IMG/VR virus record: IMGVR_UViG_3300047445_000186
Span: 186,001-250,000 of that record
Reading direction: 5' to 3' (one strand)
DNA: 64,000 bases
The notes under the pieces were generated by a model that was not told the DNA's origin, ran no database searches, and was given only the letters and a program-made list of their open reading frames with translations. Numbering within the stretch: position 1 is the first letter of the stretch; each line of letters opens with the position of its first letter. Shown piece after piece: positions 24,667 to 44,410 of this stretch. The position numbers and the translations under genes are program-made.

Positions 24667-24688
24667 TGTAACGTCTGTTCGTTACAAT
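24667..24688 (+). promoter_or_regulatory. TGTAAC-N8-GTTACAAT promoter/operator
   Basis: Inverted repeat whose right arm overlaps a TACAAT -10 box, 21 nt upstream of 24710. Confidence 0.6.
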
Positions 24689-24709
24689 TGAACATTCATA
24701 GGAGAGTAC

Positions 24710-25762
24710 ATGGAACATATGCAATTGGGGCATCTGAACAACGATTTTCGGACGTGCCTGCATCATCTGAATGCGCACGGCATGACTGCGCACCCACGTG
24801 GAACGACCACGAAAGAGCTGCTGAATTACAACATTTCGCTCGGCGATCCACGCAATCGGATCATCAATTTCCCTGATCGGAAGACCAATCTGAAGTACCT
24901 GCTCGGTGAATTCTGCTGGTATCTCGCTGGTGACAACGACCCTGACAGCATCATCCCGTACAGCAAGTTCTGGGACAACATCCGCAATTCTGGCGACATG
25001 CCGGGATACGCGAAGGGCACGATCAATTCGAACTACGGCTATCGTCTGTTCGGTCTGGACAACGAGATGCTCGTTCCGCATGTCGAGAAGGCAATGACTC
25101 CGTACGGTTGCGATGAGACCGGTGCAGTCGTGATCGAGCCGCATGAGACGACAGTGATTCGTGGTCAGAGCCAGTGGGCAGCAGTAGTCGACATGCTCAA
25201 GGCCGACAAGGATTCGCGTCAAGCGATCATGAACATCCATCGCCCAAGTGATCGTCACGTCGGGAACAAGGACGTTGCATGTACCCTGACCCTGCAGTTC
25301 TTCATTCGTGAGAACAAGTTGTTCATGATCACGAACATGCGATCGAACGACATCATTCTCGGCTTCACGAACGACGTGTTCCAGTTCACGATGCTGCAAG
25401 AAGGCCTGATGGTTCAACTGCGTGAAACGTACCCTGAGCTTGAGCTCGGCGCGTACTACCACAATGCAGGTTCGATGCACATCTACGACAGGCACTTCGA
25501 GATGGCGAACAAGATCGTCGCTGACGAACGAGCACTCGAGCTGTCAATGGTTCCAATGGATCGATTCGACTCCGAGATTCTGGACAGCCTGGTCGAGATT
25601 GAAACTGAGTGGCGCAAGGACGGCATGAAGAAGGACTTCAACTTCAATCTGTACACCTCGTACCAGAAGCTCACACCGTACTGGCAGAACCTGATTCAAA
25701 TGTGCTTCGCCGAAGATGGTGAAGCAATGCACGCCGTGTTCGGCATCCCAGAGGAGCATTGA
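24710..25762 (+). CDS. T4 gp42-like dCMP hydroxymethylase/hydroxylase (thymidylate synthase fold)
   Basis: INSNYG, DSRQAIMNIHRPS, catalytic ACT, MRSNDIILGFTND (Asp at the dCMP-specifying position, like gp42 D179) and NAGSMHIYDRHF. Confidence 0.85.
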   Translation: MEHMQLGHLNNDFRTCLHHLNAHGMTAHPRGTTTKELLNYNISLGDPRNRIINFPDRKTNLKYLLGEFCWYLAGDNDPDSIIPYSKFWDNIRNSGDMPGYAKGTINSNYGYRLFGLDNEMLVPHVEKAMTPYGCDETGAVVIEPHETTVIRGQSQWAAVVDMLKADKDSRQAIMNIHRPSDRHVGNKDVACTLTLQFFIRENKLFMITNMRSNDIILGFTNDVFQFTMLQEGLMVQLRETYPELELGAYYHNAGSMHIYDRHFEMANKIVADERALELSMVPMDRFDSEILDSLVEIETEWRKDGMKKDFNFNLYTSYQKLTPYWQNLIQMCFAEDGEAMHAVFGIPEEH

Positions 25763-25763
25763 A

Positions 25764-25940
25764 ATGGAAATGGCATTTGCGCTGTTGCTAGTTCTGATCG
25801 GAGGCTTCGGCCTTCTGGTCGGCTTGAACTTCAGCCACAAGGAAGGTGACGGCGACATGTCGACGTTGTACGCCATAATTGGCGGTGCTTGGGCTGCTGG
25901 CCTTTGCACGTTCGCAGCGAAAGTGATGCACCTCACATGA
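25764..25940 (+). CDS. Small two-TM membrane protein
   Basis: 58 aa with two hydrophobic spans; ATGA-coupled to the next ORF. Confidence 0.65.
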   Translation: MEMAFALLLVLIGGFGLLVGLNFSHKEGDGDMSTLYAIIGGAWAAGLCTFAAKVMHLT

Positions 25941-26146
25941 GCGATAACCTGGTTGGATATAGAGGCGCGACCACTATGGACACCGGGTATTTCTACTGTC
26001 CTTATCCGTTCGGGTCTACTGAAGAGCAGATCCGAGCGATAAACGCGAGCCTTGAAGCATCGCGTCTGACGGAAGAACAACGTGCGTTCCAGCAGAAGCT
26101 CGCAAAGAGCATCAAAGACACACCGAAGGTTCCATGGAAAAGCTGA
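25937..26146 (+). CDS. Small protein with a gp23 major-capsid-like N-terminal motif
   Basis: LVGYRGATTMDTGYFYCPY versus T4 gp23 VGYKGPNEMDAGIYYAPY (recalled). Confidence 0.6.
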   Translation: MSDNLVGYRGATTMDTGYFYCPYPFGSTEEQIRAINASLEASRLTEEQRAFQQKLAKSIKDTPKVPWKS

Positions 26147-26601
26147 CAATCATTGCGTACTACAGGCCTGAAAGCGATAAGAACGCGTTCGCCATCCGCG
26201 GCGAAGTCTCTGAACGGTACGAGTCGCTATACAAGTGGCTGAGTGGCGGGAAGTGCTCGGCTCGGTCCGTGTACAGCGACATGCCGTGGGACGTGATCGT
26301 TTTCGATGATCCATTCGATGAGCAATCGTTCCTCGTGTTCTATGAAGGTGACATCGAATTCAGCACCATGCAGGGAGACGAGCCGTACCGTCCGCTGCCG
26401 AAGATCAAGTACAAGCAAGGTGTCGTGCCGGCCGAAGAGCGAGTGATCGGTCAGTCGTACCTTGGGAACTGCGGGCACTATCACGTTCATCAGGACCCGA
26501 ACCGGGATTTCATGGGCGAACTTGCAGACACTTTGGCCGCCGAGATCTCTCGGGAGATTGACAACGAGATCCTAGAACAGCTCCGCAAAGAATTCACTTA
26601 A
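26134..26601 (+). CDS. Hypothetical protein with a gp23 major-capsid-like C-terminal helix
   Basis: ELADTLAAEISREIDNEIL versus T4 gp23 ELSGILATEIMLEINREVV (recalled). Confidence 0.6.
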   Translation: MEKLTIIAYYRPESDKNAFAIRGEVSERYESLYKWLSGGKCSARSVYSDMPWDVIVFDDPFDEQSFLVFYEGDIEFSTMQGDEPYRPLPKIKYKQGVVPAEERVIGQSYLGNCGHYHVHQDPNRDFMGELADTLAAEISREIDNEILEQLRKEFT

Positions 26602-26617
26602 AGTCTAGAATACCTCA

Positions 26618-28363
26618 ATGAGATACGAAAAACAAATTCTCGAGGCGTACGATCGCCTTGAGTTCAAACCACGTGGTCGTCAGGTCGAAGACATCGACAC
26701 GATCATGACCTCGTTCCTCGATGAGGGATTCAAGACCGTGATTCTGTCGGCTCCGACTGGCACGGGTAAGTCGATCATTGGTGCCGTTACTGCTGAAGCT
26801 CTGCACCGCATTCGCTGGCCGGATCTGAACGCGAACGCGAGCTTCTTGCTCACGCCAACGAACATTCTGTCTCAGCAGTACCACGACACCTTCCAAGAAG
26901 GACGTGATCCGAATGACACGCGTTTCCGGATGATCAAGGGCGCTGGGAACTTCCCATGCGAGGCTCTTAGCACGGAGTCTGAACCGCAGACCGCCGAGTC
27001 GTGCGCGCTCCGTCTGTTCCAGAAAGAGCAGATGACTTCGATGATCGACACGTTCTGCAATGGATGTGACTTCGCCCATCAGAAGAAGATGCGTGACAAG
27101 TCGCGCCATCTGATCACGAACTACGCGTACTACTTCATCGATCGGATGTACATGGAGATGCTCGCGAAGCGAACCGTGTGCGTGTTCGACGAAGCGCATT
27201 TGCTGAACGATCTGTTCACCGAGCACAACGCGATCTACTTCAGCGATTCGCGTCTGAAGAAGATGGCCGAGGAAATCAACGAAGGCCTATCGCTCGGGCA
27301 CACTGAAGTGTTCAAGATCCTGAAGACGGTGAAGACGGATCTGAATGCCGGGAAGATCAACGATCAGACGTACATGAACTATCTGCACCAGCTTGCAGAC
27401 GCGTACGGGCAAGTCACTGAAGCGGCTCAAGAAGCGGCTGAACGTGAAGTGCGGAATCCGAAGAAGTACCTGCAACTCTCGCGCCTGTCGAAGAAGTACT
27501 TCGGCCTTGGCTGCAAGATTGGTGACCTTGTTGAGTACGGGTACCCACATGCATTCGAGTACAAGGAACGGAATCCGAAGTTCAATCAGCACGAAGACGA
27601 AATCTCCGTGAAGCCAATCTTCGTTGGCGACATGTTCGACAAGCTGATCAACGCAGATTACAACCTACTGATGTCGGCAACGTTCAGCGAGCAGTTCGCT
27701 CGTCGTACCCTGACCCTCGAGAACGCGAAGCACATCCGTCTGCAACCTTCGTTCCCGAAAGAGAACAAGAAGGTCGTGTTCTACAAGCCGCAGAATCTGA
27801 ACTTCACCTCGCTGAAAGAGTCGAAGACAGTGAAGCAGCTTCAAGCGACCTGCTACGAGATCGCGAAGCACCACACCGACAAGGGTGAACGTGGTATCGT
27901 GCTCGCTCCGAGCTTCGCGCTGAATGAAGGCATTGCCGCTGCGTTCGACGTGATGGGTCTGAAGGCACGAGTGTTCGAGCACAAGCGCGGTGAGAAGCTC
28001 GCTGAAGTTCTGGGTCGATTCAAGCGACACACTGACGGACCTGCAGTGATGCTCACTCCGTCTGGCTTCGAGGGTATGGACTTGGCTGGTGATCTGAGCC
28101 GTTATCAGATCATCTTGAAGGCACCGTTCGGTTCGCTGGGTGAAGCGCGGATGAAGAAGATTCTGGCAACGTGGCCTGACATTTACTCGCTGCTTTGCAC
28201 GATGAAGCTCGTTCAAGGTGCTGGTCGTTCGGTCCGTGGGCCAGATGACTACGCCACGACGTACATGCTCGACACGAACATTCAGCGTCTCTGGACAGCG
28301 AAGAACATGGAATGGGCTGATGAGTTCCAGACGATCTTCACTTCGATGCTGAGCGACGACTAA
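26618..28363 (+). CDS. DinG/Rad3-like SF2 helicase
   Basis: SAPTGTGKS, FDEAHLL, LMSATF, GFEGMDL and QGAGRSVRGPDD. Confidence 0.85.
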   Translation: MRYEKQILEAYDRLEFKPRGRQVEDIDTIMTSFLDEGFKTVILSAPTGTGKSIIGAVTAEALHRIRWPDLNANASFLLTPTNILSQQYHDTFQEGRDPNDTRFRMIKGAGNFPCEALSTESEPQTAESCALRLFQKEQMTSMIDTFCNGCDFAHQKKMRDKSRHLITNYAYYFIDRMYMEMLAKRTVCVFDEAHLLNDLFTEHNAIYFSDSRLKKMAEEINEGLSLGHTEVFKILKTVKTDLNAGKINDQTYMNYLHQLADAYGQVTEAAQEAAEREVRNPKKYLQLSRLSKKYFGLGCKIGDLVEYGYPHAFEYKERNPKFNQHEDEISVKPIFVGDMFDKLINADYNLLMSATFSEQFARRTLTLENAKHIRLQPSFPKENKKVVFYKPQNLNFTSLKESKTVKQLQATCYEIAKHHTDKGERGIVLAPSFALNEGIAAAFDVMGLKARVFEHKRGEKLAEVLGRFKRHTDGPAVMLTPSGFEGMDLAGDLSRYQIILKAPFGSLGEARMKKILATWPDIYSLLCTMKLVQGAGRSVRGPDDYATTYMLDTNIQRLWTAKNMEWADEFQTIFTSMLSDD

Positions 28364-28374
28364 CCCGGTACAGG

Positions 28375-28400
28375 GATGGAGGGTGTTCCCCTCCATCTTA
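28375..28400 (+). terminator. Hairpin after the helicase gene
   Basis: GATGGAGGG / CCCTCCATC stem; weak T tail. Confidence 0.45.
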
Positions 28401-28409
28401 GAATGATTC

Positions 28410-29528: not shown

Positions 29529-29716
29529 AGAAAGTTCTCCTCTCCCTCGCCGTTCTGACAGCCCTCATGGGCTGTGGCAAGATCGATCGCATGACTGCTG
29601 CATGGGCCGGTGACGGCACGAAGACGTGCGTTGACGGTGTCACGTACCTGCAGTTCACGAGCGGCGCGACTCTCCAAGTGGACCGGACTGGCAAGCCAGT
29701 TCCTTGCGGCAAATGA
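29525..29716 (+). CDS. Small lipoprotein
   Basis: Signal peptide MKKVLLSLAVLTALMG-C (lipobox). Confidence 0.75.
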   Translation: MKKVLLSLAVLTALMGCGKIDRMTAAWAGDGTKTCVDGVTYLQFTSGATLQVDRTGKPVPCGK

Positions 29717-30006
29717 CAACGATCTCGTCCCGCAAGGGGACGACTTCAAATAGCCTGACGTTCGATGACCTAACCGACGCAGAGCTCGAGCTGATCTCGG
29801 CCTTGGTCTACAATGTACGACTCGGCAAGGGAAGTATCTATCGCGAAGCTGCGTACGATCTGATGAACAAGATCGAATCCTTCAAGCAGGACGATGACTA
29901 CATCAGCCGAGCCAGTGCACTCGTGGACCCTGAATGTGATGTGCTTGACAGCCATGGCACGCCAGCGTTCACGATCCGTAATCAAGACTACGAAGTCGTC
30001 GTATGA
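29713..30006 (+). CDS. Hypothetical protein
   Basis: ATGA overlaps on both sides. Confidence 0.65.
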   Translation: MTTISSRKGTTSNSLTFDDLTDAELELISALVYNVRLGKGSIYREAAYDLMNKIESFKQDDDYISRASALVDPECDVLDSHGTPAFTIRNQDYEVVV

Positions 30007-30590
30007 GCATAAACAAATTTCTGATCGAGGGTCTCGATCGTCTCGGCAAAGACACCCTGATCGATGGGATCATGCACCAGCGCGGGTACCATCAGGTCCT
30101 GCACTTCTCGAAGCCACGTCATCTCGCTCGGTACATGCCAAGCCCAACGGGCATGACTGCAGCCGAGATGGAGAGTGTCTCGTTCAAGGAGTACCAAGAG
30201 CAATCGTTCAGGACAATGTTCGCGATGCTCCGCAATCTGCCGTACACTCAGATCATTTGCAATCGGGCGCACCTTGGCGAATGCGTGTACGCTCCCCTGT
30301 ACCGCGGGTACGCAGGCGAGTACGTGTTCGACATCGAGAAGCAGTTCTTGAAGGGCGATTCGCGAACCATTCGTCTGATCCTGCTCACTGAAGACTTCAG
30401 CGTGTCGAAGCACTTCGTCGATGACGGTGAGTCATTCGACATCGCAAAGCGCGAGCAAGAGCAGGACCTGTTCAAGGCTGCGTTCGAGAAGTCGTGCATC
30501 AGTGACAAGCGAATCGTGAACGTCACCGATCGCGAAACTGGCGGCTATCGCTCGAAGCAAGACATTCTGCTTGAGGTCACCTCACTATGA
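30003..30590 (+). CDS. dNMP (thymidylate-kinase-like) kinase
   Basis: P-loop IEGLDRLGKDT, ICNRAHLGECVYAPLYRG. Confidence 0.75.
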   Translation: MSINKFLIEGLDRLGKDTLIDGIMHQRGYHQVLHFSKPRHLARYMPSPTGMTAAEMESVSFKEYQEQSFRTMFAMLRNLPYTQIICNRAHLGECVYAPLYRGYAGEYVFDIEKQFLKGDSRTIRLILLTEDFSVSKHFVDDGESFDIAKREQEQDLFKAAFEKSCISDKRIVNVTDRETGGYRSKQDILLEVTSL

Positions 30591-31024: not shown

Positions 31025-31207
31025 TCAGACGTCGAGCAGAGCCTTCAGCTTGTCGATGTGCTTCTCGATGCCCTCGAGCTGCTCCTTCGAGATCTTCGCG
31101 CGGATCGCCGCCGTGGTGAGCTGCGTCTTCATGCGCTCGTGGATCGGGGGCGGTGCACGACGTTCACGTGCGGGTTTTGCTTCCTTGGTGGCAGTGGCTG
31201 TGGCCAT
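31025..31207 (-). CDS. Small basic protein (60 aa)
   Basis: RBS CAGGAG and a TACATT box upstream; Lys/Arg/Ala-rich. Confidence 0.7.
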   Translation of the reverse strand: MATATATKEAKPARERRAPPPIHERMKTQLTTAAIRAKISKEQLEGIEKHIDKLKALLDV

Positions 31208-31352
31208 GATCAATCTCCTGGTTTAATCGACCACCATCGGCCGATGTGTCTAATGTATCCCGAACCTGGCCAAACGTGTTTGGCGAATTGTAATGAACTG
31301 TAACAGCCGGCCAACTCAGTATTTCATCGTCCCAATTTGGCCCCGAGAAGCC

Positions 31353-31371
31353 TGAACAATTCGGTTACAAT
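31353..31371 (+). promoter_or_regulatory. TGAAC-N6-GTTACAAT promoter/operator variant
   Basis: TGAACAATTCGGTTACAAT closely resembles TGTAACGATTTCGGTTACAAT at 44390. Confidence 0.55.
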
Positions 31372-31394: not shown

Positions 31395-31835
31395 ATGACA
31401 CTAATATTTGAAATCAAAGCGGCCCAATTGGCCGCTCGTAAAGAACGTCGGGCAGCGGATGTTGCTGTGCTGACGACCCTGATCGGTGAGGCGGAAATCA
31501 TCGGCAAGAACGATGGAAATCGCGCAGTCACGGACCAGGAAGTGCAGGCCGTAATTAAGAAGTTCATCAAGAATATCGATGAGGTTCTGAAGGTCGTAAA
31601 TCCTGGGTCTGATCAATTCACGACCGCTCAGGAAGAGAAGATTCTTCTGAGCACGTTCCTGCCTGTGCAGCTCTCTGAAGCTGACCTGCGGCTGATCATT
31701 CAAACCGTGATCGATGCACATCAGCTCGTGGCTCCAAAGGGTCTCGGTGTTCTGATGAAGGAACTGAAGGACTCGCATAACGGCACGTACGATGGTGCGC
31801 TTGCCTCGAAACTTGCAAAGGAATTGTTGAAGTGA
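31395..31835 (+). CDS. GatB/YqeY-domain protein
   Basis: EEKILLSTFLPVQLSEADL, GVLMKELK and YDGALAS match the YqeY pattern. Confidence 0.8.
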   Translation: MTLIFEIKAAQLAARKERRAADVAVLTTLIGEAEIIGKNDGNRAVTDQEVQAVIKKFIKNIDEVLKVVNPGSDQFTTAQEEKILLSTFLPVQLSEADLRLIIQTVIDAHQLVAPKGLGVLMKELKDSHNGTYDGALASKLAKELLK

Positions 31836-33001
31836 AAGTTGGTGTAGTTAAACTTGGTGCTCGCATTACCTGGGAAACCGACGCAGCTGTCGGTCCTGGT
31901 GAAGCGATCTCGATCTGCAAGGCACTCACGCGAGGTGGGGCTGAGGTCCATGTGTTCACGAAGATTCTGGCGAAGGACACGCTCGATCCGTCGATTCAGT
32001 GGCACAATACGGTTGGCAGCGATGCACGTTCAATCCATGCAGGTCAAGACCTCGACACGACCGGTCTCGATGCTCTGCTCGTGATTAACGGGAATGTGAA
32101 CTTCTTCGGTGGCGCCGAAGATCGTGCTCAGATTCTGAATTACACGATCATCAATCGGTTCGCGGGTCCGGTGATCTACGTGATGTGCGACCCTGAACTG
32201 CCGATGCTGCAGATCTGGGAGAACGTCTCGAAGAAGCAAGTCGATCCGAAGTACAACTGGGAGAACGTGTACGCTGAGTCGGACATTCGTGTCACGAAGC
32301 CGATCAATGTGCTCTGCCAGCCGTTCAATGTTCAGGCAATGCAGGAAACGTGGAAGAGCAAGAAGGGCGCTGTGCCACTCGGCACGATGTTCCACTTCCC
32401 GATGGAACGCTTCCCGCTCCTGAACGAGTGGCTAGATTACGCCGAAACTCCGGCAGTCGATCTGCTCTACGGCGGTACGGCTCGTGGTGGGCGCCGCATT
32501 CCGAATCTGTACAAGTGGTACTGCGGTCTGCCTGAAGATCTGAACGTCGAAATCTTCGGCAAGATCGACAATGAAGACTTCGAGAAGCACAACAAGATCG
32601 GGAAGCTTCCAGTGAAACGGTACCCAACGTTCACGGGTATGGTGAAGTACTCTGAAGTGCTACCAAAGATGAACAACGCTCTTGCGCATCTGGTCACTGG
32701 CGATCCGTCGTACGAAACGCTCGATCTGATTCCTCAACGCGTTGCCGAGTGCATCGCCGCTGGGAACATCGTGTTCATCGACGCGAACATCGACAAGAGC
32801 CGTCGGATCTATCCTGTTGGAACCGAGGCGCATGACTTCCTGTACGTGCAGACGCAAGATGAACTCGTCGAGCGACTGCGTGTGCTGAAGGAAGAGCCAA
32901 GTCTGCGCTCCACTCTGTGGCAGCAACAGACGATCGCAACGAACTTCAACGCCGACACGTTCACAAAGTCGTTGGTCACGAAGATCGCGGAGTTCGTATG
33001 A
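31832..33001 (+). CDS. bgt: T4 beta-glucosyltransferase-family DNA glycosyltransferase (GT-B)
   Basis: Colinear with T4 BGT: LLVINGNVNFFGG, DLLYGGTARGGRR, VEIFGK, PTFTG, FIDANIDKSRRI. The sugar donor is not established. Confidence 0.85.
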   Translation: MKVGVVKLGARITWETDAAVGPGEAISICKALTRGGAEVHVFTKILAKDTLDPSIQWHNTVGSDARSIHAGQDLDTTGLDALLVINGNVNFFGGAEDRAQILNYTIINRFAGPVIYVMCDPELPMLQIWENVSKKQVDPKYNWENVYAESDIRVTKPINVLCQPFNVQAMQETWKSKKGAVPLGTMFHFPMERFPLLNEWLDYAETPAVDLLYGGTARGGRRIPNLYKWYCGLPEDLNVEIFGKIDNEDFEKHNKIGKLPVKRYPTFTGMVKYSEVLPKMNNALAHLVTGDPSYETLDLIPQRVAECIAAGNIVFIDANIDKSRRIYPVGTEAHDFLYVQTQDELVERLRVLKEEPSLRSTLWQQQTIATNFNADTFTKSLVTKIAEFV

Positions 33002-33693: not shown

Positions 33694-33974
33694 CCCCGAA
33701 GATTCTTGCGCGCATGATCACCCCACGTCCGTTCTACGCGATGTGGCAGCGGGGGCTTGTCACGCAAGATGGTCGAACATTCGAGTGGATGAACCGTCAG
33801 CCGTATTACACACGCAATCTCGAGGTTGGTGATCGCGTATGGATCGCGAAGCGCCTCCCTGTTTCAGGATACGACTGGTGCTTTGAGGTCTATCAGATCA
33901 CGATCGAGCAGACCGATTACGGCACGCCAAAGCTCTGGCTTGGCAAAGGTCGGCAACTGCTCTTGCCCACCTGA
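33690..33974 (+). CDS. Hypothetical protein, possible PUA/ASCH/EVE-like fold
   Basis: LEVGDRVWIAK motif; weak. Confidence 0.5.
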   Translation: MTPKILARMITPRPFYAMWQRGLVTQDGRTFEWMNRQPYYTRNLEVGDRVWIAKRLPVSGYDWCFEVYQITIEQTDYGTPKLWLGKGRQLLLPT

Positions 33975-34042
33975 TCCTCCTCTCAGGACGCCGCGAAGGT
34001 GTCCGAATGTAACAATGCTTCTATTCCCACGGAGCATTGTGA

Positions 34043-34731: not shown

Positions 34732-35061
34732 ATGAAAACCCTCGCCGTAGTACTGTTCATGCTCGGTTCGCACGCTTATGCAGGTGCATTCCTCACTGGG
34801 AAAGACCTGCTTCGCCAATCAACTGAATTCACGACTGGCTTTGTGGCCGGTGCGGTGGACAGCTTGAGTGGTGCTGGTCTCGTGTGCGTCCCGCCGCAGA
34901 CCAAGCTCGGTGAGGTTCATGAGCTGGTAATCGCATGGGTGAAGAACAAGCCAGAACGTCGTGATGGAGCAGCAGTTGAGCTGTTGTTCGAGGTTCTGAC
35001 GAATCGCTACCCATGCGTAAAGCAAGCCCCGACTCTGTCAGCACGTCGGGCAGACGTTTAA
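34732..35061 (+). CDS. Secreted Rap1a-like (T6SS amidase immunity) protein
   Basis: Signal peptide, then TGKDLL, GFVAGAVD, CVP, KNKPE and RYPC. Confidence 0.7.
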   Translation: MKTLAVVLFMLGSHAYAGAFLTGKDLLRQSTEFTTGFVAGAVDSLSGAGLVCVPPQTKLGEVHELVIAWVKNKPERRDGAAVELLFEVLTNRYPCVKQAPTLSARRADV

Positions 35062-35904: not shown

Positions 35905-36458
35905 AGTCCCGTATCAGACGAGATCAGACGGAGCGGAGCTCCGTTGTTCTTGAACGTGAACGCAAGTTCTAAGAGTTGCTTGACTGCTTCGGTGGTCAAG
36001 CACTTTTTCGTATCGAAGCCAGGGTGATGCTTCAAAAATAGCTCAGTAGCGACCATGCCAAATCGGACCGTCGTGACTTTGCATGCGTAAGTCGAGTTGT
36101 TCGTCAATTTCGCTGCTTCCTCAAGACCGATCTTCGCGATTCGGTACTCCCACCATCTCTGATTCTCCGTGACCGCATCGACGACCGTGCTCGATGACGT
36201 GACCATGTGTGTTTTCCGGCTCTTGTTCGCGGCTGCCCATTCCAGAGCGAGCTTCGTCTGCGCAGAGACATGGTACGCATTGTTCAAGAACACGTCAGCG
36301 ATCAGAGATTTCTCGATGATCTGTTTCTGAACGTCCTCAAGCGAGATGTCCTGCCCATCTGATTTATCGAAGCCGATTACTTCGTAGCCAAGTCCGCTTA
36401 GGACTTCAGCGCCAAGCTTACCGATTCCGGCCAGATGGCCCGTGATTACGGCGATCAT
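35901..36458 (-). CDS. Short-chain dehydrogenase/reductase
   Basis: TGxxxGIG (ITGHLAGIG), NNA and YxxxK (YRIAK). Confidence 0.8.
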   Translation of the reverse strand: MIAVITGHLAGIGKLGAEVLSGLGYEVIGFDKSDGQDISLEDVQKQIIEKSLIADVFLNNAYHVSAQTKLALEWAAANKSRKTHMVTSSSTVVDAVTENQRWWEYRIAKIGLEEAAKLTNNSTYACKVTTVRFGMVATELFLKHHPGFDTKKCLTTEAVKQLLELAFTFKNNGAPLRLISSDTGL

Positions 36459-38615: not shown

Positions 38616-38618
38616 CGC

Positions 38619-39456: not shown

Positions 39457-39459
39457 ACT

Positions 39460-39549
39460 ATGAACTGGCATCTTGTCTGGACTCTGTCTCCAGTCTGGGG
39501 ACCCATTCTCGTACTTGGCCTCGCGCTGATCGTGAAAGGGGAGTTGTAA
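39460..39549 (+). CDS. 29-aa membrane micro-protein
   Basis: MNWHLVWTLSPVWGPILVLGLALIVKGEL fills the intergenic gap. Confidence 0.5.
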   Translation: MNWHLVWTLSPVWGPILVLGLALIVKGEL

Positions 39550-39595
39550 CGGTGCCGATCACCGTTACAGATTGACCCTGCAAGTGTGGTACAAT
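39545..39595 (+). promoter_or_regulatory. TGTAAC-N13-GTTACA-N20-TACAAT promoter, copy 2
   Basis: TGTAACGGT / ACCGTTACA inverted repeat; GTTACA 39564-39569, TACAAT 39590-39595. Confidence 0.7.
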
Positions 39596-39601
39596 TCACC
39601 C

Positions 39602-41143
39602 ATGAACACCACACTGAACCCTGTCGCCGAAGCTGCTGCCGCAGTCTTCCTGCCCAGCCCTCAGCAAGCGGACTTCTTCAAGTGGATCCTTGAAGGCGTT
39701 GGCTCCTGCGTTCTGGAAGCTGTCGCTGGTGCCGGCAAGACGACCACGCTGATTCAAGCGCTTGGCCTGATGGTCGGAACGATCTTCCTCGGTGCATTCT
39801 CGAAGAACATCGCGGTCGAGATCGAAGCACGCGCGCCGAAGAAGCCGGGTCTGTTCATCAGCACGATGCATGCTGCTGGTTTCAGGGCCTGGCGCCGCGC
39901 CGCTCCGAAGGTCCGCATCGACGAAGACAAGTGCCGGAACATCTTCCGCAATGCGTGCCTGAAGTACCCCGAGTACAAGCCATTCGAGCAGCCGGTCCTG
40001 AAGCTCGTCGAAATGGCAAAGCAATCCGCCGTCGGTATCACGAAGTCCGAAGCTGACCGGAACGTGTGGGTCGAGATCATCGAGCACTTCGACATCGAGA
40101 CTTTCGACGAAGAACTCGGCGTCGACAACACGAACAAGATCATCAGCCTCGCTCGCAAGACCCTGCAACGTTCGCAAGAGATGGACATGGACGCCGTTGA
40201 CTTCAACGACATGATCTACGCGCCGCTGTTCCACAACGTGCGTATGTTCGAACACGACTGGGTGCTGGTTGATGAAGCCCAAGACACGAACGAGATTCGT
40301 CGCCTTCTCGCCCTGCGGATGCTGAAGCGCGGTGGACGTCTGGTCGCAGTTGGTGATCGTCACCAAGCGATCTTCGGTTTCACCGGTGCCGATTCGAAGG
40401 CACTCGAGATGATCGCGACGGCCGTGAACGCGAAGCTCCTCCCGCTCACGATCACGTATCGCTGCCCGAAGTCAGTCGTTGCTTACGCAAAGCAATGGGT
40501 GAACCACATCGAAGCTGCCGAAACCGCGCCTGAAGGCGTCGTGTCCCACGGTGATGTGAACAACCTGTTCAGCCTCGCGGTTCCTGGTGACGCAATCCTC
40601 TGCCGCTTCAACGCGCCGCTGATCAAGTATGTGTATCAGTTCATCGCCCGCGGTATTCCCGCGAAGGTCGAAGGTCGCGAAATTGGCGAAGGTCTGAAGG
40701 TCCTCGCACGTCGCTGGAAGGTCAAGAAGCTCGCTGCCATGACCGACAAGCTCGACGCGTACCTCGAGCGTGAAGTCGCGAAATGGCGCGTGAAGGAACA
40801 AGAAGCGAAGGCCGCCGCGGTCGAAGACAAGGTGAACTGCCTCCGCGTGATCATCGATCGCGTCGCCAAGATCGATCCGAACTGCGCGAATCCGGTCGAA
40901 CGCGTTTGTGAAGAAGTCGACGCGATCTTCACCCAAGAAAAGGGACAGAAGGTCGTGCTGTTCAGCTCGATCCACAAGGCCAAGGGTCGCGAATGGCACA
41001 AGGTTGTTTGGCTCCAAACCGGTCCTTCTGCTTGGGCTCGCAAGGAATGGGAACAAGAGCAAGAGGATAACCTCTGCTACGTTGCAGCAACTCGTGCAAA
41101 GCACGAACTCTGCCTGGTCGATATCTCGAAGGAAGAAAAGTGA
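39602..41143 (+). CDS. UvrD/Rep-like SF1 helicase
   Basis: AVAGAGKTT, LVDEAQD, VGDRHQAIFGF, TYRCP, SIHKAKGREW and YVAATRAK. Confidence 0.9.
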   Translation: MNTTLNPVAEAAAAVFLPSPQQADFFKWILEGVGSCVLEAVAGAGKTTTLIQALGLMVGTIFLGAFSKNIAVEIEARAPKKPGLFISTMHAAGFRAWRRAAPKVRIDEDKCRNIFRNACLKYPEYKPFEQPVLKLVEMAKQSAVGITKSEADRNVWVEIIEHFDIETFDEELGVDNTNKIISLARKTLQRSQEMDMDAVDFNDMIYAPLFHNVRMFEHDWVLVDEAQDTNEIRRLLALRMLKRGGRLVAVGDRHQAIFGFTGADSKALEMIATAVNAKLLPLTITYRCPKSVVAYAKQWVNHIEAAETAPEGVVSHGDVNNLFSLAVPGDAILCRFNAPLIKYVYQFIARGIPAKVEGREIGEGLKVLARRWKVKKLAAMTDKLDAYLEREVAKWRVKEQEAKAAAVEDKVNCLRVIIDRVAKIDPNCANPVERVCEEVDAIFTQEKGQKVVLFSSIHKAKGREWHKVVWLQTGPSAWARKEWEQEQEDNLCYVAATRAKHELCLVDISKEEK

Positions 41144-41502: not shown

Positions 41503-41586
41503 GAACCTATCACTGAGCGCGACGAAAGTTCCCTGACGTCACCTCGTGTCGCCGAGCCTACCTTCAAACCACCTTAGGAGAATGCA

Positions 41587-41844
41587 ATGCCGAAAGAGAA
41601 AGCAGTGATCTTCCGTGTTCTGATCGAGCCGAAGTCCCTCGCCCGCGTGCTTGTCCACGCTGTTGAGCTCGACGCTCAGAACTTCCATGTTCAGGACGAT
41701 CGTGGTGGCACGGGTTACTGGCACGTGAACTTCACCGACATCCAACGGAACGTCGTTCGACAGATCGTCGGTCCTGGCGTCGACATTCAAGATCTCGACG
41801 AACATGGCCGCCCGATCCGGGTGCTAGCCTTCGCTGAGGAGTGA
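41587..41844 (+). CDS. Hypothetical protein
   Basis: RBS AGGAG. Confidence 0.65.
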   Translation: MPKEKAVIFRVLIEPKSLARVLVHAVELDAQNFHVQDDRGGTGYWHVNFTDIQRNVVRQIVGPGVDIQDLDEHGRPIRVLAFAEE

Positions 41845-42053
41845 ACATGGACGAGTTCTACCAATACCACCTGAGCGAACAAGGTCGGGCAGAGATTGCC
41901 AAGAAAGCCGAGGAACTCAGGAAGAAGCTCGAAGAAAGCCGCGAGAAGCGCGTGCCATTCAAGCTGCACGACATCGGCCAGCGCGGGGTTGCTGAAAGCT
42001 GAACGCTATCTGCCACCTAATGCCTGTATAACTCGCACCTCATGGAGAATTGA

Positions 42054-42275
42054 ATGGCTTCGATAGGAAACGGACGATGCTGCTGGGTTCTAGTTCCCGC
42101 GAAAGCAGGACAAGAAGCAGTGTTCTGCGAGAAGCCGACGGGGTACGACATGCCTCGCGACGACGATGGAAATCGACATCGCAAGTACCGCACGTTCTGC
42201 CCAGAGCACGAGGTGATCGCAAGTAAACAGGACGAGGATGAGACTCGTTCGCATGAGGACTACGGGGACTCTTGA
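42054..42275 (+). CDS. Small Cys/His-rich protein (possible Zn finger)
   Basis: CC...C...CPEH pattern; RBS GGAG. Confidence 0.5.
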   Translation: MASIGNGRCCWVLVPAKAGQEAVFCEKPTGYDMPRDDDGNRHRKYRTFCPEHEVIASKQDEDETRSHEDYGDS

Positions 42276-42287
42276 TCCCGAACCCAA

Positions 42288-42806
42288 ATGAAGGTTGCAT
42301 ATGACGTCGTGATTGGTCGGCCAGCGTGTATAGTTCTAGCTATGCGCCTAGGCGCCGACATTGCGACTTCGTTGATCTTCGACAAGAAGCACTGGTTGAT
42401 GGAACAGACCGCGAACATGAGAGTACACGACGTATCGTTCGCGACCCTTCGAAATATGGTGTACCTCTCAGAGGCGCGCTGGAACCAATGGAGCAGAGAG
42501 ATGGACAAACCGCTGGACAAATCTGAAATCACGATTCGCAAGGGTGGTGGAATGTCGATCGTCGGCGCAGACGCCACGAACCTCTACCGCGCCGTGATGC
42601 TCGGGCAGGCACTGAGGATGTACGCGAAGACCAAGATGCTCGCGACACGGAATGCGACTCCGAGCGTGATGCTCAGGATGGCGGCCGAATACTCTGGCAA
42701 GACGTACAAGCGTGGCCAGTACGTGCAGGCGGCCGATGATCTCCAGATCTGGATCGACACCATGAAGGCCGCGTTGCCGATCAACTACGAGGACGAGAAG
42801 TCATGA
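42288..42806 (+). CDS. Hypothetical protein
   Basis: The C-terminal half has strong phage codon bias; the start is uncertain. Confidence 0.55.
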   Translation: MKVAYDVVIGRPACIVLAMRLGADIATSLIFDKKHWLMEQTANMRVHDVSFATLRNMVYLSEARWNQWSREMDKPLDKSEITIRKGGGMSIVGADATNLYRAVMLGQALRMYAKTKMLATRNATPSVMLRMAAEYSGKTYKRGQYVQAADDLQIWIDTMKAALPINYEDEKS

Positions 42807-43027
42807 CCTGGCTGAAGCTCTACCGCTGGTGGAAAGGCGGTCGGTGGGTGAAACACGAGAACAAGTGGTACCTCGCTGACGTGAACGGCTACATCCGCGG
42901 CGAGTGTCTGAGCGACGAAGGGCGACCATCGTACTTCTCATGCCACGCCGATTTCAAGGGGAACCAAGCGGTCGAAGACTACCGCGCCCCGTACAAGAAT
43001 TCCCCATTCAACAAGAAAGCAAAATGA
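42803..43027 (+). CDS. Hypothetical Trp-rich protein
   Basis: ATGA overlaps. Confidence 0.55.
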   Translation: MTWLKLYRWWKGGRWVKHENKWYLADVNGYIRGECLSDEGRPSYFSCHADFKGNQAVEDYRAPYKNSPFNKKAK

Positions 43028-43485
43028 GCTACCGCCTTTACACCTTCGTGAACCACATCTACATGAGCGAGAAGCAGTTCGGTATCCAGACCGCGCACCT
43101 CGTCTCGACGATGATGAACAACGTCGCCGAACTCAAGGGCGAAGACATGCGGTCGTACCACAAGGTGCATGCATGGGCCGCTGAGTCACCAACGATCATC
43201 ATGTGTCAGGGTGGGAACGTTGCAATGCTGACTGAGTTGTACGAGAAGTTGAAGCCTCTCGCAGCCGATCTGCAGTTGCCCGTCGCGAAGTTCCACGAAG
43301 ATGAACAGAGCCTTGGTGGTGTAATCACCTGCGTCGGGGTTCTCGTTCCTGAGTACCTGTTCGACGCTGAAGTGGTATGGATCGCTGGTTCTCCAGTGTT
43401 CACGATCACGCAAGACAACCCGCGCCCTGCAACTCTGCTCGAGAACGAGTTCCTGGGGATCGTGAAGATCGCGCGTCTCGCGTAA
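43024..43485 (+). CDS. PTH2-like (peptidyl-tRNA hydrolase 2 fold) protein
   Basis: GIQTAH, a W..ESPTII segment, FHEDEQSLGGVITCVG. Confidence 0.55.
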   Translation: MSYRLYTFVNHIYMSEKQFGIQTAHLVSTMMNNVAELKGEDMRSYHKVHAWAAESPTIIMCQGGNVAMLTELYEKLKPLAADLQLPVAKFHEDEQSLGGVITCVGVLVPEYLFDAEVVWIAGSPVFTITQDNPRPATLLENEFLGIVKIARLA

Positions 43486-43495
43486 GGAGTCTCCC

Positions 43496-43981
43496 ATGAC
43501 TGATGACAACATTGACAAGTTCTTCAACGATGCAGGGTTCGCCGCTTGGCACGCCAAGATCGCGCTCACGATCGCTAAAAGTGGTCATCAGCTCATGGGC
43601 GTGTTCGATCATGAAGGCACCATGGCAAGCTTCACGTATACGATTGGTCTTGAGAAACAACTCGGATTCGAGCTGATCGTGTTCGGCCTCCCGTACAAAT
43701 ATGCAGGTCTACTTCTGAATTACATCGCGGCTCAAGTGAAAGCTGGCGAAAAGCTGGTCCTCGATGTACCAGATCAGCGGTGGGCGCAGATTCCGCTGCT
43801 GTTCAAGAAGGCCGATGAAAGAGCGCGAGGATACGTGTGCCAAGCTGATCGGTACTACGGGCACGATGTGCAGACCGTCCAGATCGTGCTACCCGATAAG
43901 AATGCTCGTTTTCCTGGAGACGCGGAGTACGATATTGAGTACATGGAACCCCGCCAATCTCTGCTCTATGACCCAACATAA
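43496..43981 (+). CDS. DUF4262-like protein
   Basis: FTYTIGL, ELIVFGLP and VQIVLPD...FP. Confidence 0.65.
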   Translation: MTDDNIDKFFNDAGFAAWHAKIALTIAKSGHQLMGVFDHEGTMASFTYTIGLEKQLGFELIVFGLPYKYAGLLLNYIAAQVKAGEKLVLDVPDQRWAQIPLLFKKADERARGYVCQADRYYGHDVQTVQIVLPDKNARFPGDAEYDIEYMEPRQSLLYDPT

Positions 43982-44360
43982 AATCGTTCACGTCCTCGTT
44001 CCAGTCCATGATCAGGGCCGCAAGGGCCCTGTCGGGGTTTTGATTCTGCATCATGTCGAAACAGAGATGTGGTTCATGCCTGCCGATTACCTTGGCGACG
44101 AGACGGCGAAGGAAGCGGCCTCGAGAATTCTACGGGACCGAACGTTCATCGACATTCCGTCTTCGCAGTTCCGGTTCGTTGCGCATCGTGGAGGCATGAC
44201 TGAAGTGTTCATGCTCTCTCAGACACCCCTGACGGTGGCCGAGGTGGACCGAGTGACACCGACCGGCGAGTATGATATGGCTACACTAGGCTCGCCAGTC
44301 GATGTCCTCGGCTCACGTGTCGAGACTGACATTCTCAGGGATCTTTCGTACTGGTCCTGA
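43968..44360 (+). CDS. Degenerate Nudix-fold protein
   Basis: WFMPADYLGDETAKEAASRILRDRT resembles a Nudix box lacking the REUxEE glutamates. Confidence 0.45.
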   Translation: MTQHKIVHVLVPVHDQGRKGPVGVLILHHVETEMWFMPADYLGDETAKEAASRILRDRTFIDIPSSQFRFVAHRGGMTEVFMLSQTPLTVAEVDRVTPTGEYDMATLGSPVDVLGSRVETDILRDLSYWS

Positions 44361-44389
44361 ACCCGACATCCCGGGTGTGAGGTTCAAGT

Positions 44390-44410
44390 TGTAACGATTT
44401 CGGTTACAAT
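44390..44410 (+). promoter_or_regulatory. TGTAAC-N7-GTTACAAT promoter/operator
   Basis: Inverted repeat overlapping TACAAT, upstream of the isomerase gene. Confidence 0.6.

What the first reader, a model, noticed from the sequence alone, without database searches (positions are those of the whole stretch)
24667..44410. The three modification operons share an unusual promoter/operator motif
Seen: TGTAACGTCTGTTCGTTACAAT (24667-24688) precedes the dCMP modifier. TGAACAATTCGGTTACAAT (31353-31371) precedes the yqeY-bgt-UDG operon. TGTAACGATTTCGGTTACAAT (44390-44410) precedes the isomerase-NTP transferase operon. A looser TGTAACAAT (34008-34016) precedes gmk. In each full copy the right arm of a TGTAAC/GTTACA inverted repeat overlaps a TACAAT -10 box. 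Inference: the scattered genes form one regulon, which is evidence independent of protein similarity that they act together. The repeat may be an operator for a phage regulator.
Basis: partly seen in the sequence, partly recalled or inferred. Interest (0 to 1): 0.72.

Follow-up and report, generated by a model that had tools for sequence, protein, structure and literature searches.

The report
Genome-wide phage early/middle promoter motif
The shared "motif" is the -10 box of a promoter type that this uncultured 332-kb phage uses about 20 times (about 45 in looser form) for all its DNA-replication and nucleotide genes, so it does not single out the DNA-modification genes; only an extra inverted half-site at three promoters (one of them the gp32-like single-strand-binding protein (SSB) gene) could be an operator.

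Summary
All four quoted strings are at the stated coordinates. Only two of the three "full copies" (24667, 44390) are true inverted repeats; 31353 is not.

The right arm is part of GTTACAAT. That word occurs 21 times in the 331,776-bp phage genome (19 on the coding strand; 3.7 expected). It is the -10 box of a promoter class that lacks a -35 box and has a fixed upstream gAnCCy box. TACAAT-N6-ATG occurs 19 times (0.8 expected), which places the transcription start 7 nt downstream and implies many leaderless mRNAs.

This class also drives the gp32-like single-strand-binding protein (SSB) gene with UvsX, UvsW, NrdAB, DNA polymerase, primase/helicase and nucleases. It is retained before the orthologous genes in a relative with 59% amino-acid identity. 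Structural genes use a separate TAAATA late-type motif.

So the modification genes belong to a broad DNA-metabolism regulon, not a private one.

The left arm (TTGTAAC) is non-random: 3 of 21 promoters against a background of 0.001 per window. The third carrier is the gp32 promoter. The arm is evolutionarily labile and no regulator was found, so an operator role remains possible but unproven.

The parts
24645..24662 (+). Upstream box of the TS-family gene promoter. GAACCT at 24645-24650 has its CC exactly 35 nt before the hexamer; GGACG follows at 24658-24662.
   Evidence: Read from the sequence. CC at -35/-34 is present at 43 and 31 TAnAAT sites against a baseline of about 6; GG at -26/-25 at about 20 against about 6. 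Class profile.
24666..24688 (+). Left arm TTGTAAC (24666-24672), 8-nt spacer, then GTTACAAT (24681-24688) with the -10 hexamer TACAAT at 24683-24688. Inferred transcription start near 24695. The start codon of the thymidylate-synthase-family gene is at 24710.
   Evidence: for the sequence. Pfam Thymidylat_synt 8e-22. PHROG thymidylate synthase 1e-43. The transcription start is inferred from the leaderless spacing rule.
24635..24642 (-). Late-type GCTAAATA box on the minus strand, for the divergent tail-fibre-like gene at 22755-24599.
   Evidence: One search lists the site. Pfam Peptidase_S74 7e-13. The complementary CTATTTAG is conserved in relatives.
26606..26611 (+). Internal TAGAAT -10 box with a CC box 35 nt upstream, placed 6 nt before the ATG of the DEAD_2/Helicase_C_2 helicase gene (26618). 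The mRNA is probably leaderless.
   Evidence: site list; Pfam.
28399..28404 (+). Internal TAGAAT -10 box with a CC box, 5 nt before the ATG of the AAA ATPase gene (28410).
31328..31371 (+). Promoter of the YqeY / beta-glucosyltransferase-family operon. CC box CGTCCC at 31328-31333, GTTACAAT at 31364-31371. There is no true left arm; TGAACA at 31353 is not complementary. Start codon at 31395.
   Evidence: Pfam YqeY 3e-15 and T4-Gluco-transf 4e-17. The G001 orthologue keeps only TACAAT.
31287..31304 (-). Divergent minus-strand TACAAT (31292 down to 31287) with a GTTACA word 6 nt upstream of it (plus-strand 31299-31304). It precedes a 60-aa minus-strand ORF.
33973..34016 (+). gmk promoter. CC box GATCCT at 33973-33978 overlaps the upstream stop codon. 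GGACG is at 33986-33990. The -10 variant TGTAACAAT is at 34008-34016. The architecture, including the 32-nt gap, matches the TS-family gene promoter.
   Evidence: for the sequence. Conserved as TGTAACAATG in G001. Pfam Guanylate_kin 5e-15.
44367..44410 (+). Promoter of the sugar-isomerase / nucleotidyltransferase-kinase operon. CC box CATCCC at 44367-44372, left arm TTGTAAC at 44389-44395, 7-nt spacer, GTTACAAT at 44403-44410.
   Evidence: PHROG arabinose 5-phosphate isomerase 9e-66. Pfam NTP_transferase plus APH. The G001 orthologue has a 5/6 left arm at the same spacing.
39545..39595 (+). Class A promoter: TGTAAC-N13-GTTACA, then 20 nt, then TACAAT (39590-39595), then 6 nt to the ATG of a UvrD-like helicase gene (leaderless).
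48137..48186 (+). Class A promoter: TGTAAC...GTTACA repeat at 48137-48160, then 20 nt, then TACAAT at 48181-48186. This is the third strict repeat match in the window.
58397..58447 (+). Class A promoter: TGTAAC-N13-GTTACA, then 20 nt, then TACAAT at 58442-58447.
31154..31172 (+). Terminator-like hairpin after the last gene of the TS-family gene operon (ends 30979).
   Evidence: consensus scan only.
35977..36002 (+). Strong terminator-like hairpin (11 pairs plus a T run) that closes the YqeY...gmk...deoxyribosyltransferase gene string.

Best explanation
The window lies in an uncultured, T4-related jumbo phage of 331,776 bp from rhizosphere metagenomes. No phage RNA polymerase or sigma factor was detected.

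SHOWN: a genome-wide promoter architecture.
- The reported sites fit one pattern: a gAnCCy box with its CC exactly 35/34 nt before the hexamer, no -35 hexamer, then a TAnAAT -10 box.
- About 45 sites fit this pattern. About 20 of them carry the longer form CGTTACAATTG.
- In that longer form, the G two bases before the hexamer sits where the G of an extended -10 box (TGn) would be.

INFERRED: the transcription start.
- Transcription should start 7 nt after the hexamer, because TACAAT-N6-ATG recurs and opens real genes as leaderless mRNAs.

SHOWN: which genes each class drives.
- The CGTTACAAT subclass drives DNA replication, recombination, nucleotide metabolism and DNA-modification genes together.
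- Structural genes use a separate (C/G)TAAATA late-type box.
- Small unrelated early-type genes use a third cassette (class A): two GTTACA words, tandem or inverted, ending 20 nt before TACAAT.

INFERRED: mechanism.
- Host sigma-70 holoenzyme reads the -10 box.
- An unidentified factor, or an RNA polymerase contact, uses the CC box about 47 nt upstream of the start in place of a -35 contact. The logic resembles T4 middle promoters, but MotA and AsiA are absent.

The left arm TTGTAAC.
- It is an accessory extra copy of the word CGTTACA. It occurs at three promoters here: gp32, the TS-family gene and the arabinose-5-P-isomerase-like operon.
- My best guess, at about 40% within this explanation, is that it adds a second binding site for a factor that recognises this word. 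Because it lies across the spacer and -10 box, it would damp these promoters.
- This last step is not shown.
For: Motif counts and positions:
- GTTACAAT occurs 21 times (19 on the plus strand) against 3.7 simulated. It is 18 intergenic against 1 coding on the plus strand, and GTTACA is the most enriched intergenic hexamer.
- Fixed registers and the CC box are shown.
- The generic -35/-10 scan finds none of the four sites, and canonical promoters are not enriched: 6 found against 8.1 expected.
- TACAAT-N6-ATG occurs 19 times against 0.8 and opens ORFs of 55-513 aa.

Downstream genes:
- gp32, RecA/UvsX, UvsW-like helicase, NrdA/B, AAA clamp-loader-like protein, NMNAT-Nudix, NT5C, RNase_T-family exonuclease, DNA polymerase B, 5'-3' exonuclease, Toprim/DnaB, PD-(D/E)XK nuclease.
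- The modification genes.
- The late-type TAAATA box precedes tail sheath, adaptor, tail fibre and tail assembly genes.

Conservation:
- In G001 (336 kb, 45% GC, median 59% amino-acid identity) GTTACAAT is again about 21 copies and strand-biased. It precedes orthologues of NrdA, the UvsW operon, gp32, primase, the polB operon, SIS and the TS-family gene.
- The CC box and the N6-ATG spacing recur in G001.
- The TS-family gene orthologues of about 11 of 22 relatives keep GTTACAAT.

Other:
- No RNA polymerase, Sigma70_r2, MotA or AsiA was detected.
- The exact left arm occurs in 3 of 21 GT-TACAAT promoters and 0 of 53 other TACAAT promoters, against a background of 0.00106 per window.
- Extra GTTACA/TGTAAC words recur around the gp32 -10 box in many lineages.
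Against: - There is no transcript data. No RNA run holds this DNA, so start sites, timing and the -10 role are inferred from sequence statistics only.
- The host is unknown, so "sigma-70-type" is an assumption.
- Very divergent phage RNA polymerase or sigma proteins (phiKZ type, gp55 type) could escape Pfam. The MotA, AsiA and T7-RNAP searches had no positive control.
- A promoter element about 47 nt upstream of the start with a 27-28 nt gap to the -10 box has no well-established sigma-70 counterpart.
- The GG half of the box is not enriched in G001.
- The C before the G (CGT rather than TGn) does not match the extended -10 consensus.
- The same word CGTTACA occurs as an upstream element in class A promoters. 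This is not explained by a pure -10 reading.
Confidence: 0.72

Rival explanations
1. The palindrome is an operator of a dedicated phage regulator, and it defines a private regulon of the three DNA-modification operons plus gmk.
For: - Two modification operons (TS-family gene, arabinose-5-P-isomerase-like) carry perfect 7-bp-arm palindromes over the -10 box.
- In relatives the repeat recurs at the TS-family gene in G002, and before a MazG-like NTP pyrophosphohydrolase in G001 that could belong to a cytosine-replacement pathway.
- The overlap of 2 of 3 repeat-bearing promoters with 3 modification promoters among 21 has a hand-calculated p of about 0.04.
Against: - The 31353 and 34008 sites are not palindromes.
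- The best palindrome cluster in the genome is at the gp32/UvsX promoter. In G001 it is at the UvsW operon.
- The shared GTTACAAT occurs at about 20 promoters of general replication genes.
- The left arm is absent from most orthologous TS-family and SIS promoters. Three near-complete relatives have no such palindrome at all, yet G004 still has GTTACAAT strongly enriched.
- No candidate regulator was found.
Confidence: 0.08
2. The left arm has no function of its own. Extra GTTACA/TGTAAC words near -10 boxes would be by-products of local duplication or recombination between abundant promoter cassettes, and are tolerated rather than selected.
For: - Orientation and spacing of the extra words vary freely between lineages at the same promoter. 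Examples: inverted N8 here against direct N6 in G001 for the TS-family gene; N7, N8, N3 and direct repeats for gp32.
- Three related genomes lack the palindrome entirely.
- Two of the three sites here share 23 of 25 positions including the spacer, read. This is compatible with copying.
- Shared promoter cassettes are known recombination substrates in T4-type phages (PMC4122927, PMC2839356).
Against: - Repeated independent appearance at the same few promoters (gp32 in at least four lineages, the TS-family gene in two) and 0 of 53 at other TACAAT promoters argue for selection.
- The arm always extends to 7 bp (TTGTAAC).
Confidence: 0.3
3. The promoters are not read by unmodified host sigma-70 holoenzyme. 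A phage-encoded or phage-modified specificity factor, undetected here, would recognise CGTTACA(AT) and the CC box directly.
For: - There is no -35 box.
- The CC box position is unusual.
- The identical 7-mer CGTTACA is used both at the -10 box and at upstream positions in class A promoters.
- The motif is enriched in the close uncultured relatives but not in Ralstonia phage RsoM2USA, the closest cultured relative. This suggests a lineage-specific factor.
Against: - TACAAT is a near-perfect TATAAT, and TAGAAT and TATAAT substitute for it in the same architecture.
- No sigma or RNA polymerase homologue was found.
Confidence: 0.15
4. The palindrome is a pair of back-to-back -10 boxes, that is, a bidirectional promoter giving an antisense or divergent transcript.
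For: - At the gp32 promoter here, and at the UvsW-operon promoter in G001, full GTTACAAT boxes do occur on both strands.
- 24667 lies in a divergent intergenic region.
Against: - At 24667 and 44390 the left arm read on the other strand is GTTACAAG or GTTACAAC. It lacks the final T that is essential in -10 hexamers.
- The divergent tail-fibre gene at 24599 has its own late-type box.
- At 44390 there is no minus-strand gene to serve.
Confidence: 0.05

Closest known systems
Bacteriophage T4 middle promoters (MotA box plus sigma-70 -10 box; sigma appropriation by MotA/AsiA), as reviewed in PMC2988021
   Same: - A host-type -10 box with a stringent match and no -35 hexamer.
- A phage-specific upstream element.
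- An extended -10 feature in a large fraction of sites.
- Tens of copies per genome.
- The same gene set: SSB (gp32), uvsX, uvsW, DNA polymerase, nrd genes, dCMP-modifying enzyme, glucosyltransferase.
   Different: - The upstream element is gAnCCy about 47 nt before the start, with a 27-28 nt gap to the -10 box. The MotA box is TGCTTtA, 12 +/- 1 bp from the -10 box.
- No MotA or AsiA homologue was found.
- Many transcripts appear to be leaderless.
Extended -10 (TGn/-10) sigma-70 promoters
   Same: A G two bases upstream of the hexamer, and independence from a -35 element.
   Different: The preceding base is C, not T (CGT rather than TGn). An additional distal CC box is conserved.
Repressor operators that overlap the -10 box (palindromic operators of phage and bacterial dimeric repressors)
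   Same: At 24666-24687 and 44389-44409, a palindrome with 7-bp arms and a 7-8 nt spacer covers the spacer and the -10 box.
   Different: - One arm is itself the -10 box, so its conservation says nothing about an operator.
- The other arm is labile in orthologues.
- The half-site spacing varies (3, 7, 8, and 12-13 in class A).
- No cognate protein is known.
T4-type late promoters (TATAAATA read by gp55/gp33 with the sliding clamp)
   Same: A TAAATA core without a -35 box precedes structural genes on both strands. It also occurs as a second promoter before gp32.
   Different: The preceding bases are C or G rather than TA. gp55/gp33 homologues were not searched for.
PeSL cassettes (promoter-early stem-loop) of T4-like phages (PMC4122927, PMC2839356)
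   Same: The class A elements are conserved cassettes of about 60-70 bp, an inverted repeat plus a promoter, placed before unrelated small ORFs.
   Different: The sequence is unrelated. The order (repeat before promoter) and any recombination role were not tested.

Membership tests
Sigma-70-type -10 promoter element | Hexamer close to TATAAT, with T at the first position, A at the second and T at the last. | tested here: met
   TACAAT at 24683, 31366 and 44405; AACAAT at 34011. TAGAAT and TATAAT substitute in the same architecture.
Sigma-70-type -10 promoter element | Transcription starts 6-8 nt downstream of the hexamer. | tested here: inconclusive
   The support is indirect only. TACAAT-N6-ATG occurs 19 times against 0.8 expected and opens real ORFs; the same spacing is seen in G001. 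No RNA data exist.
Canonical -35/-10 sigma-70 promoter | A TTGACA-like hexamer 16-18 bp upstream of the -10 box. | tested here: not met
   The consensus scan finds none of the four sites. TTGTAA lies only 11 nt from the hexamer.
Extended -10 (TGn) promoter | TG at positions -15/-14, one base before the hexamer. | tested here: inconclusive
   The G at -14 is present in all 21 GTTACAAT sites. Position -15 is mostly C rather than T.
T4 MotA/AsiA-dependent middle promoter | A MotA box (a/t)(a/t)(a/t)TGCTTtA 12 +/- 1 bp upstream of the -10 box (PMC2988021). | tested here: not met
   The class profile shows no such box. The only conserved upstream block is gAnCCy at -38 to -33 from the hexamer.
T4 MotA/AsiA-dependent middle promoter | MotA and AsiA are encoded by the phage. 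| tested here: not met
   No match to PF09158 or PF09010. The control genomes hold no positive, so sensitivity is unverified.
T4 MotA/AsiA-dependent middle promoter | Drives replication, recombination and nucleotide-metabolism genes. | tested here: met
Palindromic repressor operator | Dyad symmetry of the site. | tested here: met
   Met at 24666-24687 and 44389-44409, with 7-bp arms. Not met at 31353 or 34008.
Palindromic repressor operator | Both arms are conserved at orthologous promoters. | tested here: not met
   TS-family gene: the left arm is present in 1 of 22 related loci, and one more has a direct repeat. SIS: 5/6 in G001 and absent in six other loci. gp32: words are present but with variable orientation and spacing.
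Palindromic repressor operator | A cognate DNA-binding protein exists. | tested here: inconclusive
   No Sigma70_r2, HTH_3 or HTH_17 domain is encoded. Other folds and host factors were not examined.
Dedicated regulon of the DNA-modification genes | The motif is restricted to the gene set in question. | tested here: not met
   GTTACAAT occurs at about 20 promoters of general DNA metabolism. The palindrome also occurs at gp32/UvsX.
T4-type late promoter | A TAAATA-containing box without a -35 element, upstream of virion genes. | tested here: met
   About 60 sites. Downstream genes are tail sheath, adaptor, tail fibres and tail assembly.
T4-type late promoter | gp55/gp33-type late factors are encoded. 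| not tested
   No accession for these families was at hand. Sigma70_r2 gave no match.

The most novel reading that the evidence does not exclude
The 7-mer CGTTACA could be the recognition word of an unidentified phage factor that acts at two promoter classes.
- In class A promoters it occurs as tandem or inverted words about 38, 48 and 57 nt upstream of the start.
- In the DNA-metabolism class it lies over the -10 box.
- It forms high-affinity palindromes at the gp32, TS-family gene and arabinose-pathway promoters.

Such a factor could time the early-to-middle-to-late switch in a T4-related jumbo phage lineage that lacks MotA and AsiA. Together with the CC box about 47 nt upstream of the start, this would be a new way of redirecting host RNA polymerase.
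Probability: 0.2. Interest if true: 0.7.

Novelty: new variant of a known kind. Interest (0 to 1): 0.38.

Why it matters
- It corrects an over-reading. Promoter sharing here cannot be used as independent evidence that the scattered modification genes form one pathway, because the same promoter serves the whole replication apparatus.
- It gives a usable transcription map for an uncultured jumbo-phage lineage. There are three sequence-defined promoter classes that partition by gene function, widespread leaderless mRNAs, and a conserved distal CC box.
- These features allow temporal classes to be predicted for hundreds of unannotated genes in this phage and its relatives.
- If the CGTTACA word or the CC box is bound by a phage factor, this would be a MotA/AsiA-independent route to middle-type transcription in T4-related phages.

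Tried and rejected
- **Megablast of 8 kb against cultured phages:** no match.
- **RNA evidence:** no RNA run holds this DNA. Only distant wastewater metatranscriptomes share protein words.
- **Read laying on four DNA holders over 23800-26800:** identical sequence with no variants, so no population-level test of the arms was possible.
- **Full-text search for GTTACAAT:** only irrelevant primer hits. The paper on the closest cultured phage, RsoM2USA, has no promoter analysis, and its genome shows no GTTACAAT enrichment.
- **TTGTAA as a -35 box:** rejected. It is 11 nt from the hexamer, and nothing resembling a -10 box lies 17 nt after it.
- **The palindrome as a terminator or RNA hairpin:** rejected. 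It lies upstream of the inferred start, the stem is AT-rich, and there is no T run (one search lists none there).
- **The CC box as merely stop-codon context:** rejected. Its distance to the hexamer is fixed, while the distance to the upstream stop codon varies from 1 to about 2000 nt.
- **A CC...GG dyad centred about 41.5 nt upstream of the start, like a class II activator site:** kept only as a weak idea, because the GG half is not enriched in G001.
- **Resemblance to TyrR, LexA or LacI-family boxes:** recalled from memory only. The spacings do not match, so this was not pursued.
- **Second palindrome site in G002 (L046):** no G000 homologue lies downstream.

Full report
**Setting**

The window is bases 186001-250000 of a single 331,776-bp contig with 54% GC. 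The contig is a virus record estimated at 94% complete. The same sequence is found in several rhizosphere metagenomes, and no RNA run holds it.

My own gene call gives 485 genes, 437 of them on the plus strand. By DNA polymerase, the closest cultured phage is Ralstonia phage RsoM2USA at 47% identity, followed by Xanthomonas and Stenotrophomonas jumbo phages and the Rak2-like group. Uncultured relatives of 190-350 kb are present in IMG/VR.

**Checking the observation**

All four quoted strings are at the stated coordinates.

- 24667-24686 and 44390-44408 are perfect TGTAAC/GTTACA inverted repeats, with spacers of 8 and 7 nt. The arms extend to 7 bp.
- The 31353 "copy" is not an inverted repeat. 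TGAACA is not complementary to GTTACA, and the site fails a scan that allows one mismatch.
- 34008 (TGTAACAAT) is a -10 variant.
- The strict pattern gives three matches in the window against none in 100 shuffles, but the third is at 48137, upstream of another promoter type.

**The motif across the genome**

| Pattern | Observed | Expected |
|---|---|---|
| GTTACAAT, both strands | 21 (19 on plus) | 3.7 +/- 2.2 |
| TACAAT, both strands | 101 (86 on plus) | 55.5 |
| Palindrome overlapping the -10 box | 3 | 0 |
| TACAAT-N6-ATG | 19 | 0.8 |

- GTTACAAT is 18 intergenic against 1 coding on the plus strand. GTTACA is the single most enriched intergenic hexamer, with TACAAT close behind.
- Relative to TACAAT, the word GTTACA sits in three registers: -2 (21 sites), -26/-27 (10 sites) and -35/-36 (6 sites). 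TGTAAC sits at -45/-44 (6 sites) and -16/-15 (3 sites).

**Three promoter classes**

Aligning all candidates shows distinct architectures.

It carries a gAnCCy box whose CC lies exactly 35/34 nt before the hexamer.
   - CC is present at 43 and 31 TAnAAT sites against a baseline of about 6.
   - A weaker GG(ACG) follows at -26/-25.
2. *Class B without the extension.* The same CC box occurs with plain TACAAT, TAGAAT or TATAAT. Classes 1 and 2 together come to about 45 sites.
3. *Class A.* Two GTTACA words, tandem or inverted, end 20 nt before TACAAT and are followed by a conserved leader. Window examples are at 39590, 48181 and 58442.

A fourth motif, (C/G)TAAATA, occurs about 60 times on both strands.

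The gmk site fits the class B architecture exactly: GATCCT, a 32-nt gap, then AACAAT. It shares the CCTCCTCTCwGGACG stretch with the TS-family gene promoter.

**Evidence that TACAAT is a -10 box**

- TACAAT-N6-ATG opens ORFs of 55-513 aa. These include the UvrD-like helicase gene at 39602 and several class B genes.
- This pattern is expected if transcription starts 7 nt after the hexamer and the mRNAs are leaderless. The same spacing is enriched in a relative.
- A generic -35/-10 scan finds none of the four sites, and canonical promoters are not enriched. These promoters therefore lack a -35 box.
- In GTTACAAT the G lies where the G of an extended -10 box (TGn) would be, although the base before it is usually C.
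- No RNA polymerase, Sigma70_r2, MotA or AsiA homologue was detected. Divergent factors could be missed, and three of those searches had no positive control.

**What the classes drive**

| Gene (window coordinates) | Annotation | E-value |
|---|---|---|
| 24710 | Thymidylate-synthase family | Pfam 8e-22, PHROG 1e-43 |
| 31395 | YqeY | 3e-15 |
| 31832 | T4 beta-glucosyltransferase family | 4e-17 |
| 34043 | Guanylate kinase | 5e-15 |
| 44439 | SIS protein; PHROG "arabinose 5-phosphate isomerase" | 9e-66 |
| 45334 | Nucleotidyltransferase plus kinase | 1e-4, 1e-5 |

The other CGTTACAAT promoters precede the following:

- gp32-like single-strand-binding protein (SSB) and RecA/UvsX
- a UvsW-like helicase
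- NrdA and NrdB
- a clamp-loader-like AAA protein
- NMNAT-Nudix
- an NT5C nucleotidase
- an RNase_T-family exonuclease
- family B DNA polymerase
- a 5'-3' exonuclease
- Toprim/DnaB helicase
- a PD-(D/E)XK nuclease
- an FAD oxidoreductase

Plain CC-box promoters drive RNA-repair and nucleotide genes, including a genuine ThyA. TAAATA boxes precede tail sheath, head-tail adaptor, tail fibres and tail assembly genes.

The classes therefore partition by function. The modification operons belong to the general DNA-metabolism class.

The TS-family gene "operon" also has internal leaderless promoters at 26606 and 28399. Terminator-like hairpins lie at 31154 and 35977.

**Conservation in relatives**

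- *G001.* This 336-kb relative has 45% GC, is syntenic, shares 222 of 485 genes and has a median 59% amino-acid identity.
  - It again has about 21 GTTACAAT sites, biased to its coding strand.
  - The sites lie before orthologues of NrdA, the UvsW operon, gp32, primase, the polB operon, SIS, the TS-family gene and others.
  - The CC box is conserved (peak at 20 of 97 TACAAT against a baseline of about 3-4). The GG half is not.
- *TS-family gene orthologues.* Upstream of the gene in 22 related loci, about 11 have GTTACAAT and most of the rest have TACAAT, TAGAAT or TATAAT. The divergent late-type box is also conserved.
- *Other genomes.* GTTACAAT is enriched in G004 and G002, weakly in G005 and G003, and not in RsoM2USA.

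**The left arm**

The left arm is statistically real. The exact TGTAAC occurs at -24 to -10 in 3 of 21 GT-TACAAT promoters and 0 of 53 other TACAAT promoters, against a background of 0.00106 per window.

It is not specific to the modification genes:

- The third site is the gp32/UvsX promoter, which carries a cluster of four words.
- In G001 such palindromes precede the UvsW operon and a MazG-like NTP pyrophosphohydrolase.
- In G002 they precede the TS-family gene and an unknown region.
- G003, G004 and G005 have none.

At orthologous promoters the arm is labile:

- The TS-family gene promoter has an inverted N8 repeat here and in G002, a direct N6 repeat in G001, and nothing elsewhere.
- The SIS promoter has a 5/6 arm in G001 and none in six other loci.
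- gp32 promoters in many lineages carry extra words in variable number, orientation and spacing. The inverted N8 form recurs in L076 and L080-82.

No HTH_3 or HTH_17 protein is encoded.

The same 7-mer, CGTTACA, forms the -10 box of class B, the left arms (as its complement) and the upstream words of class A. This hints at a factor that recognises the word, but it does not prove one.

**Conclusion**

The shared part of the motif is the -10 box of a genome-wide, lineage-conserved DNA-metabolism promoter class. That class resembles T4 middle promoters in logic (PMC2988021) but differs in its upstream element and lacks MotA/AsiA.

The operator idea remains open for three promoters, including gp32. 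Against it stand the poor conservation of the arm and the absence of a candidate binding protein.

Class A cassettes precede unrelated proteins and resemble PeSL elements of T4-like phages (PMC4122927).

Noticed in passing
genome-wide; window examples 21402/21407, 24635-24642 (-), 37037 (-), 47797 (-), 63367, 63603: A (C/G)TAAATA motif occurs at about 60 intergenic sites on both strands. It precedes tail sheath, adaptor, tail-fibre and tail-assembly genes and resembles the T4 late promoter TATAAATA. It also forms a second promoter about 70 nt downstream of the class B -10 box before gp32, an arrangement conserved in many relatives.
   Followed up: partly
genome-wide; window 22359, 26606, 28399, 39590, 60871: Leaderless genes appear widespread. 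TACAAT-N6-ATG occurs 19 times against 0.8 expected, with TAGAAT variants as well. Examples include the UvrD-like helicase, the DEAD_2 helicase, the AAA ATPase and the Tpt1-ThyA operon. This is unusual for a T4-related phage and may say something about the unknown host.
   Followed up: partly
window 22359, 39545-39595, 48137-48186, 58397-58447; about 16-18 sites genome-wide: Class A cassettes consist of two GTTACA words (inverted N12-13 or tandem N3), 20 nt, TACAAT and a conserved CACCCATCGACA-like leader. They precede unrelated, mostly small ORFs with no paralogy by blastp. They are PeSL-like and are also present in G001.
   Followed up: partly
window 44439-46944 and 31832-33001: The SIS protein matches the PHROG annotated as arabinose 5-phosphate isomerase (9e-66). 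It is followed by a fused nucleotidyltransferase plus APH-type kinase. With the TS-family enzyme and a T4-Gluco-transf-family transferase, this suggests a glycosylated (possibly arabinosylated) hydroxymethyl-pyrimidine DNA rather than plain glucosyl-hmC.
   Followed up: no
window 24710-25762 versus 61431-62369: There are two thymidylate-synthase-family genes. One is divergent (Pfam 8e-22) and is the candidate hydroxymethylase. The other is a canonical ThyA (6e-100), co-transcribed with a Tpt1/KptA RNA 2'-phosphotransferase. A dCMP deaminase gene lies at genome 65782-66270, and a weak thymidylate-kinase-like protein is encoded at window 30003-30590.
   Followed up: partly
   Followed up: partly
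window 34732-35061: A 109-aa protein matches Rap1a (Pfam 1.6e-14), an immunity protein against type VI secretion peptidoglycan-hydrolase effectors. It sits just after gmk and is an odd passenger in a phage nucleotide operon.
   Followed up: no
genome 49328-50479, 75064, 86050-87321, 131535, 138236; window 60883-61431: The phage carries a large RNA-repair toolkit: an HD plus AAA_33 kinase (Pnkp-like), RNA ligase with a PHA02142 OB domain, RlaP, HAD_SAK_2, CCA/polyA polymerase and Tpt1. All are behind CC-box promoters. tRNA-like k-mers are enriched in intergenic DNA near genome 116-119 kb; no tRNA scan was run.
   Followed up: no
genome 50650-50702 (outside the window); G001 121265-121288: Back-to-back GTTACAAT boxes on opposite strands, with several extra words, occur at the gp32 promoter here. 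At the UvsW-operon promoter of G001 they are nested inside a 12-bp GC-rich inverted repeat.
   Followed up: partly
genome 185369-187327 (runs into window 1-1327): A full-length PrkA-type AAA protein kinase (Pfam 4e-145) lies behind a CC-box promoter. It is uncommon in phages.
   Followed up: no
G001 versus G000: Two syntenic relatives with 59% median protein identity differ by 9 points in GC content (45% against 54%). They nevertheless keep the same promoter words at orthologous positions.
   Followed up: partly
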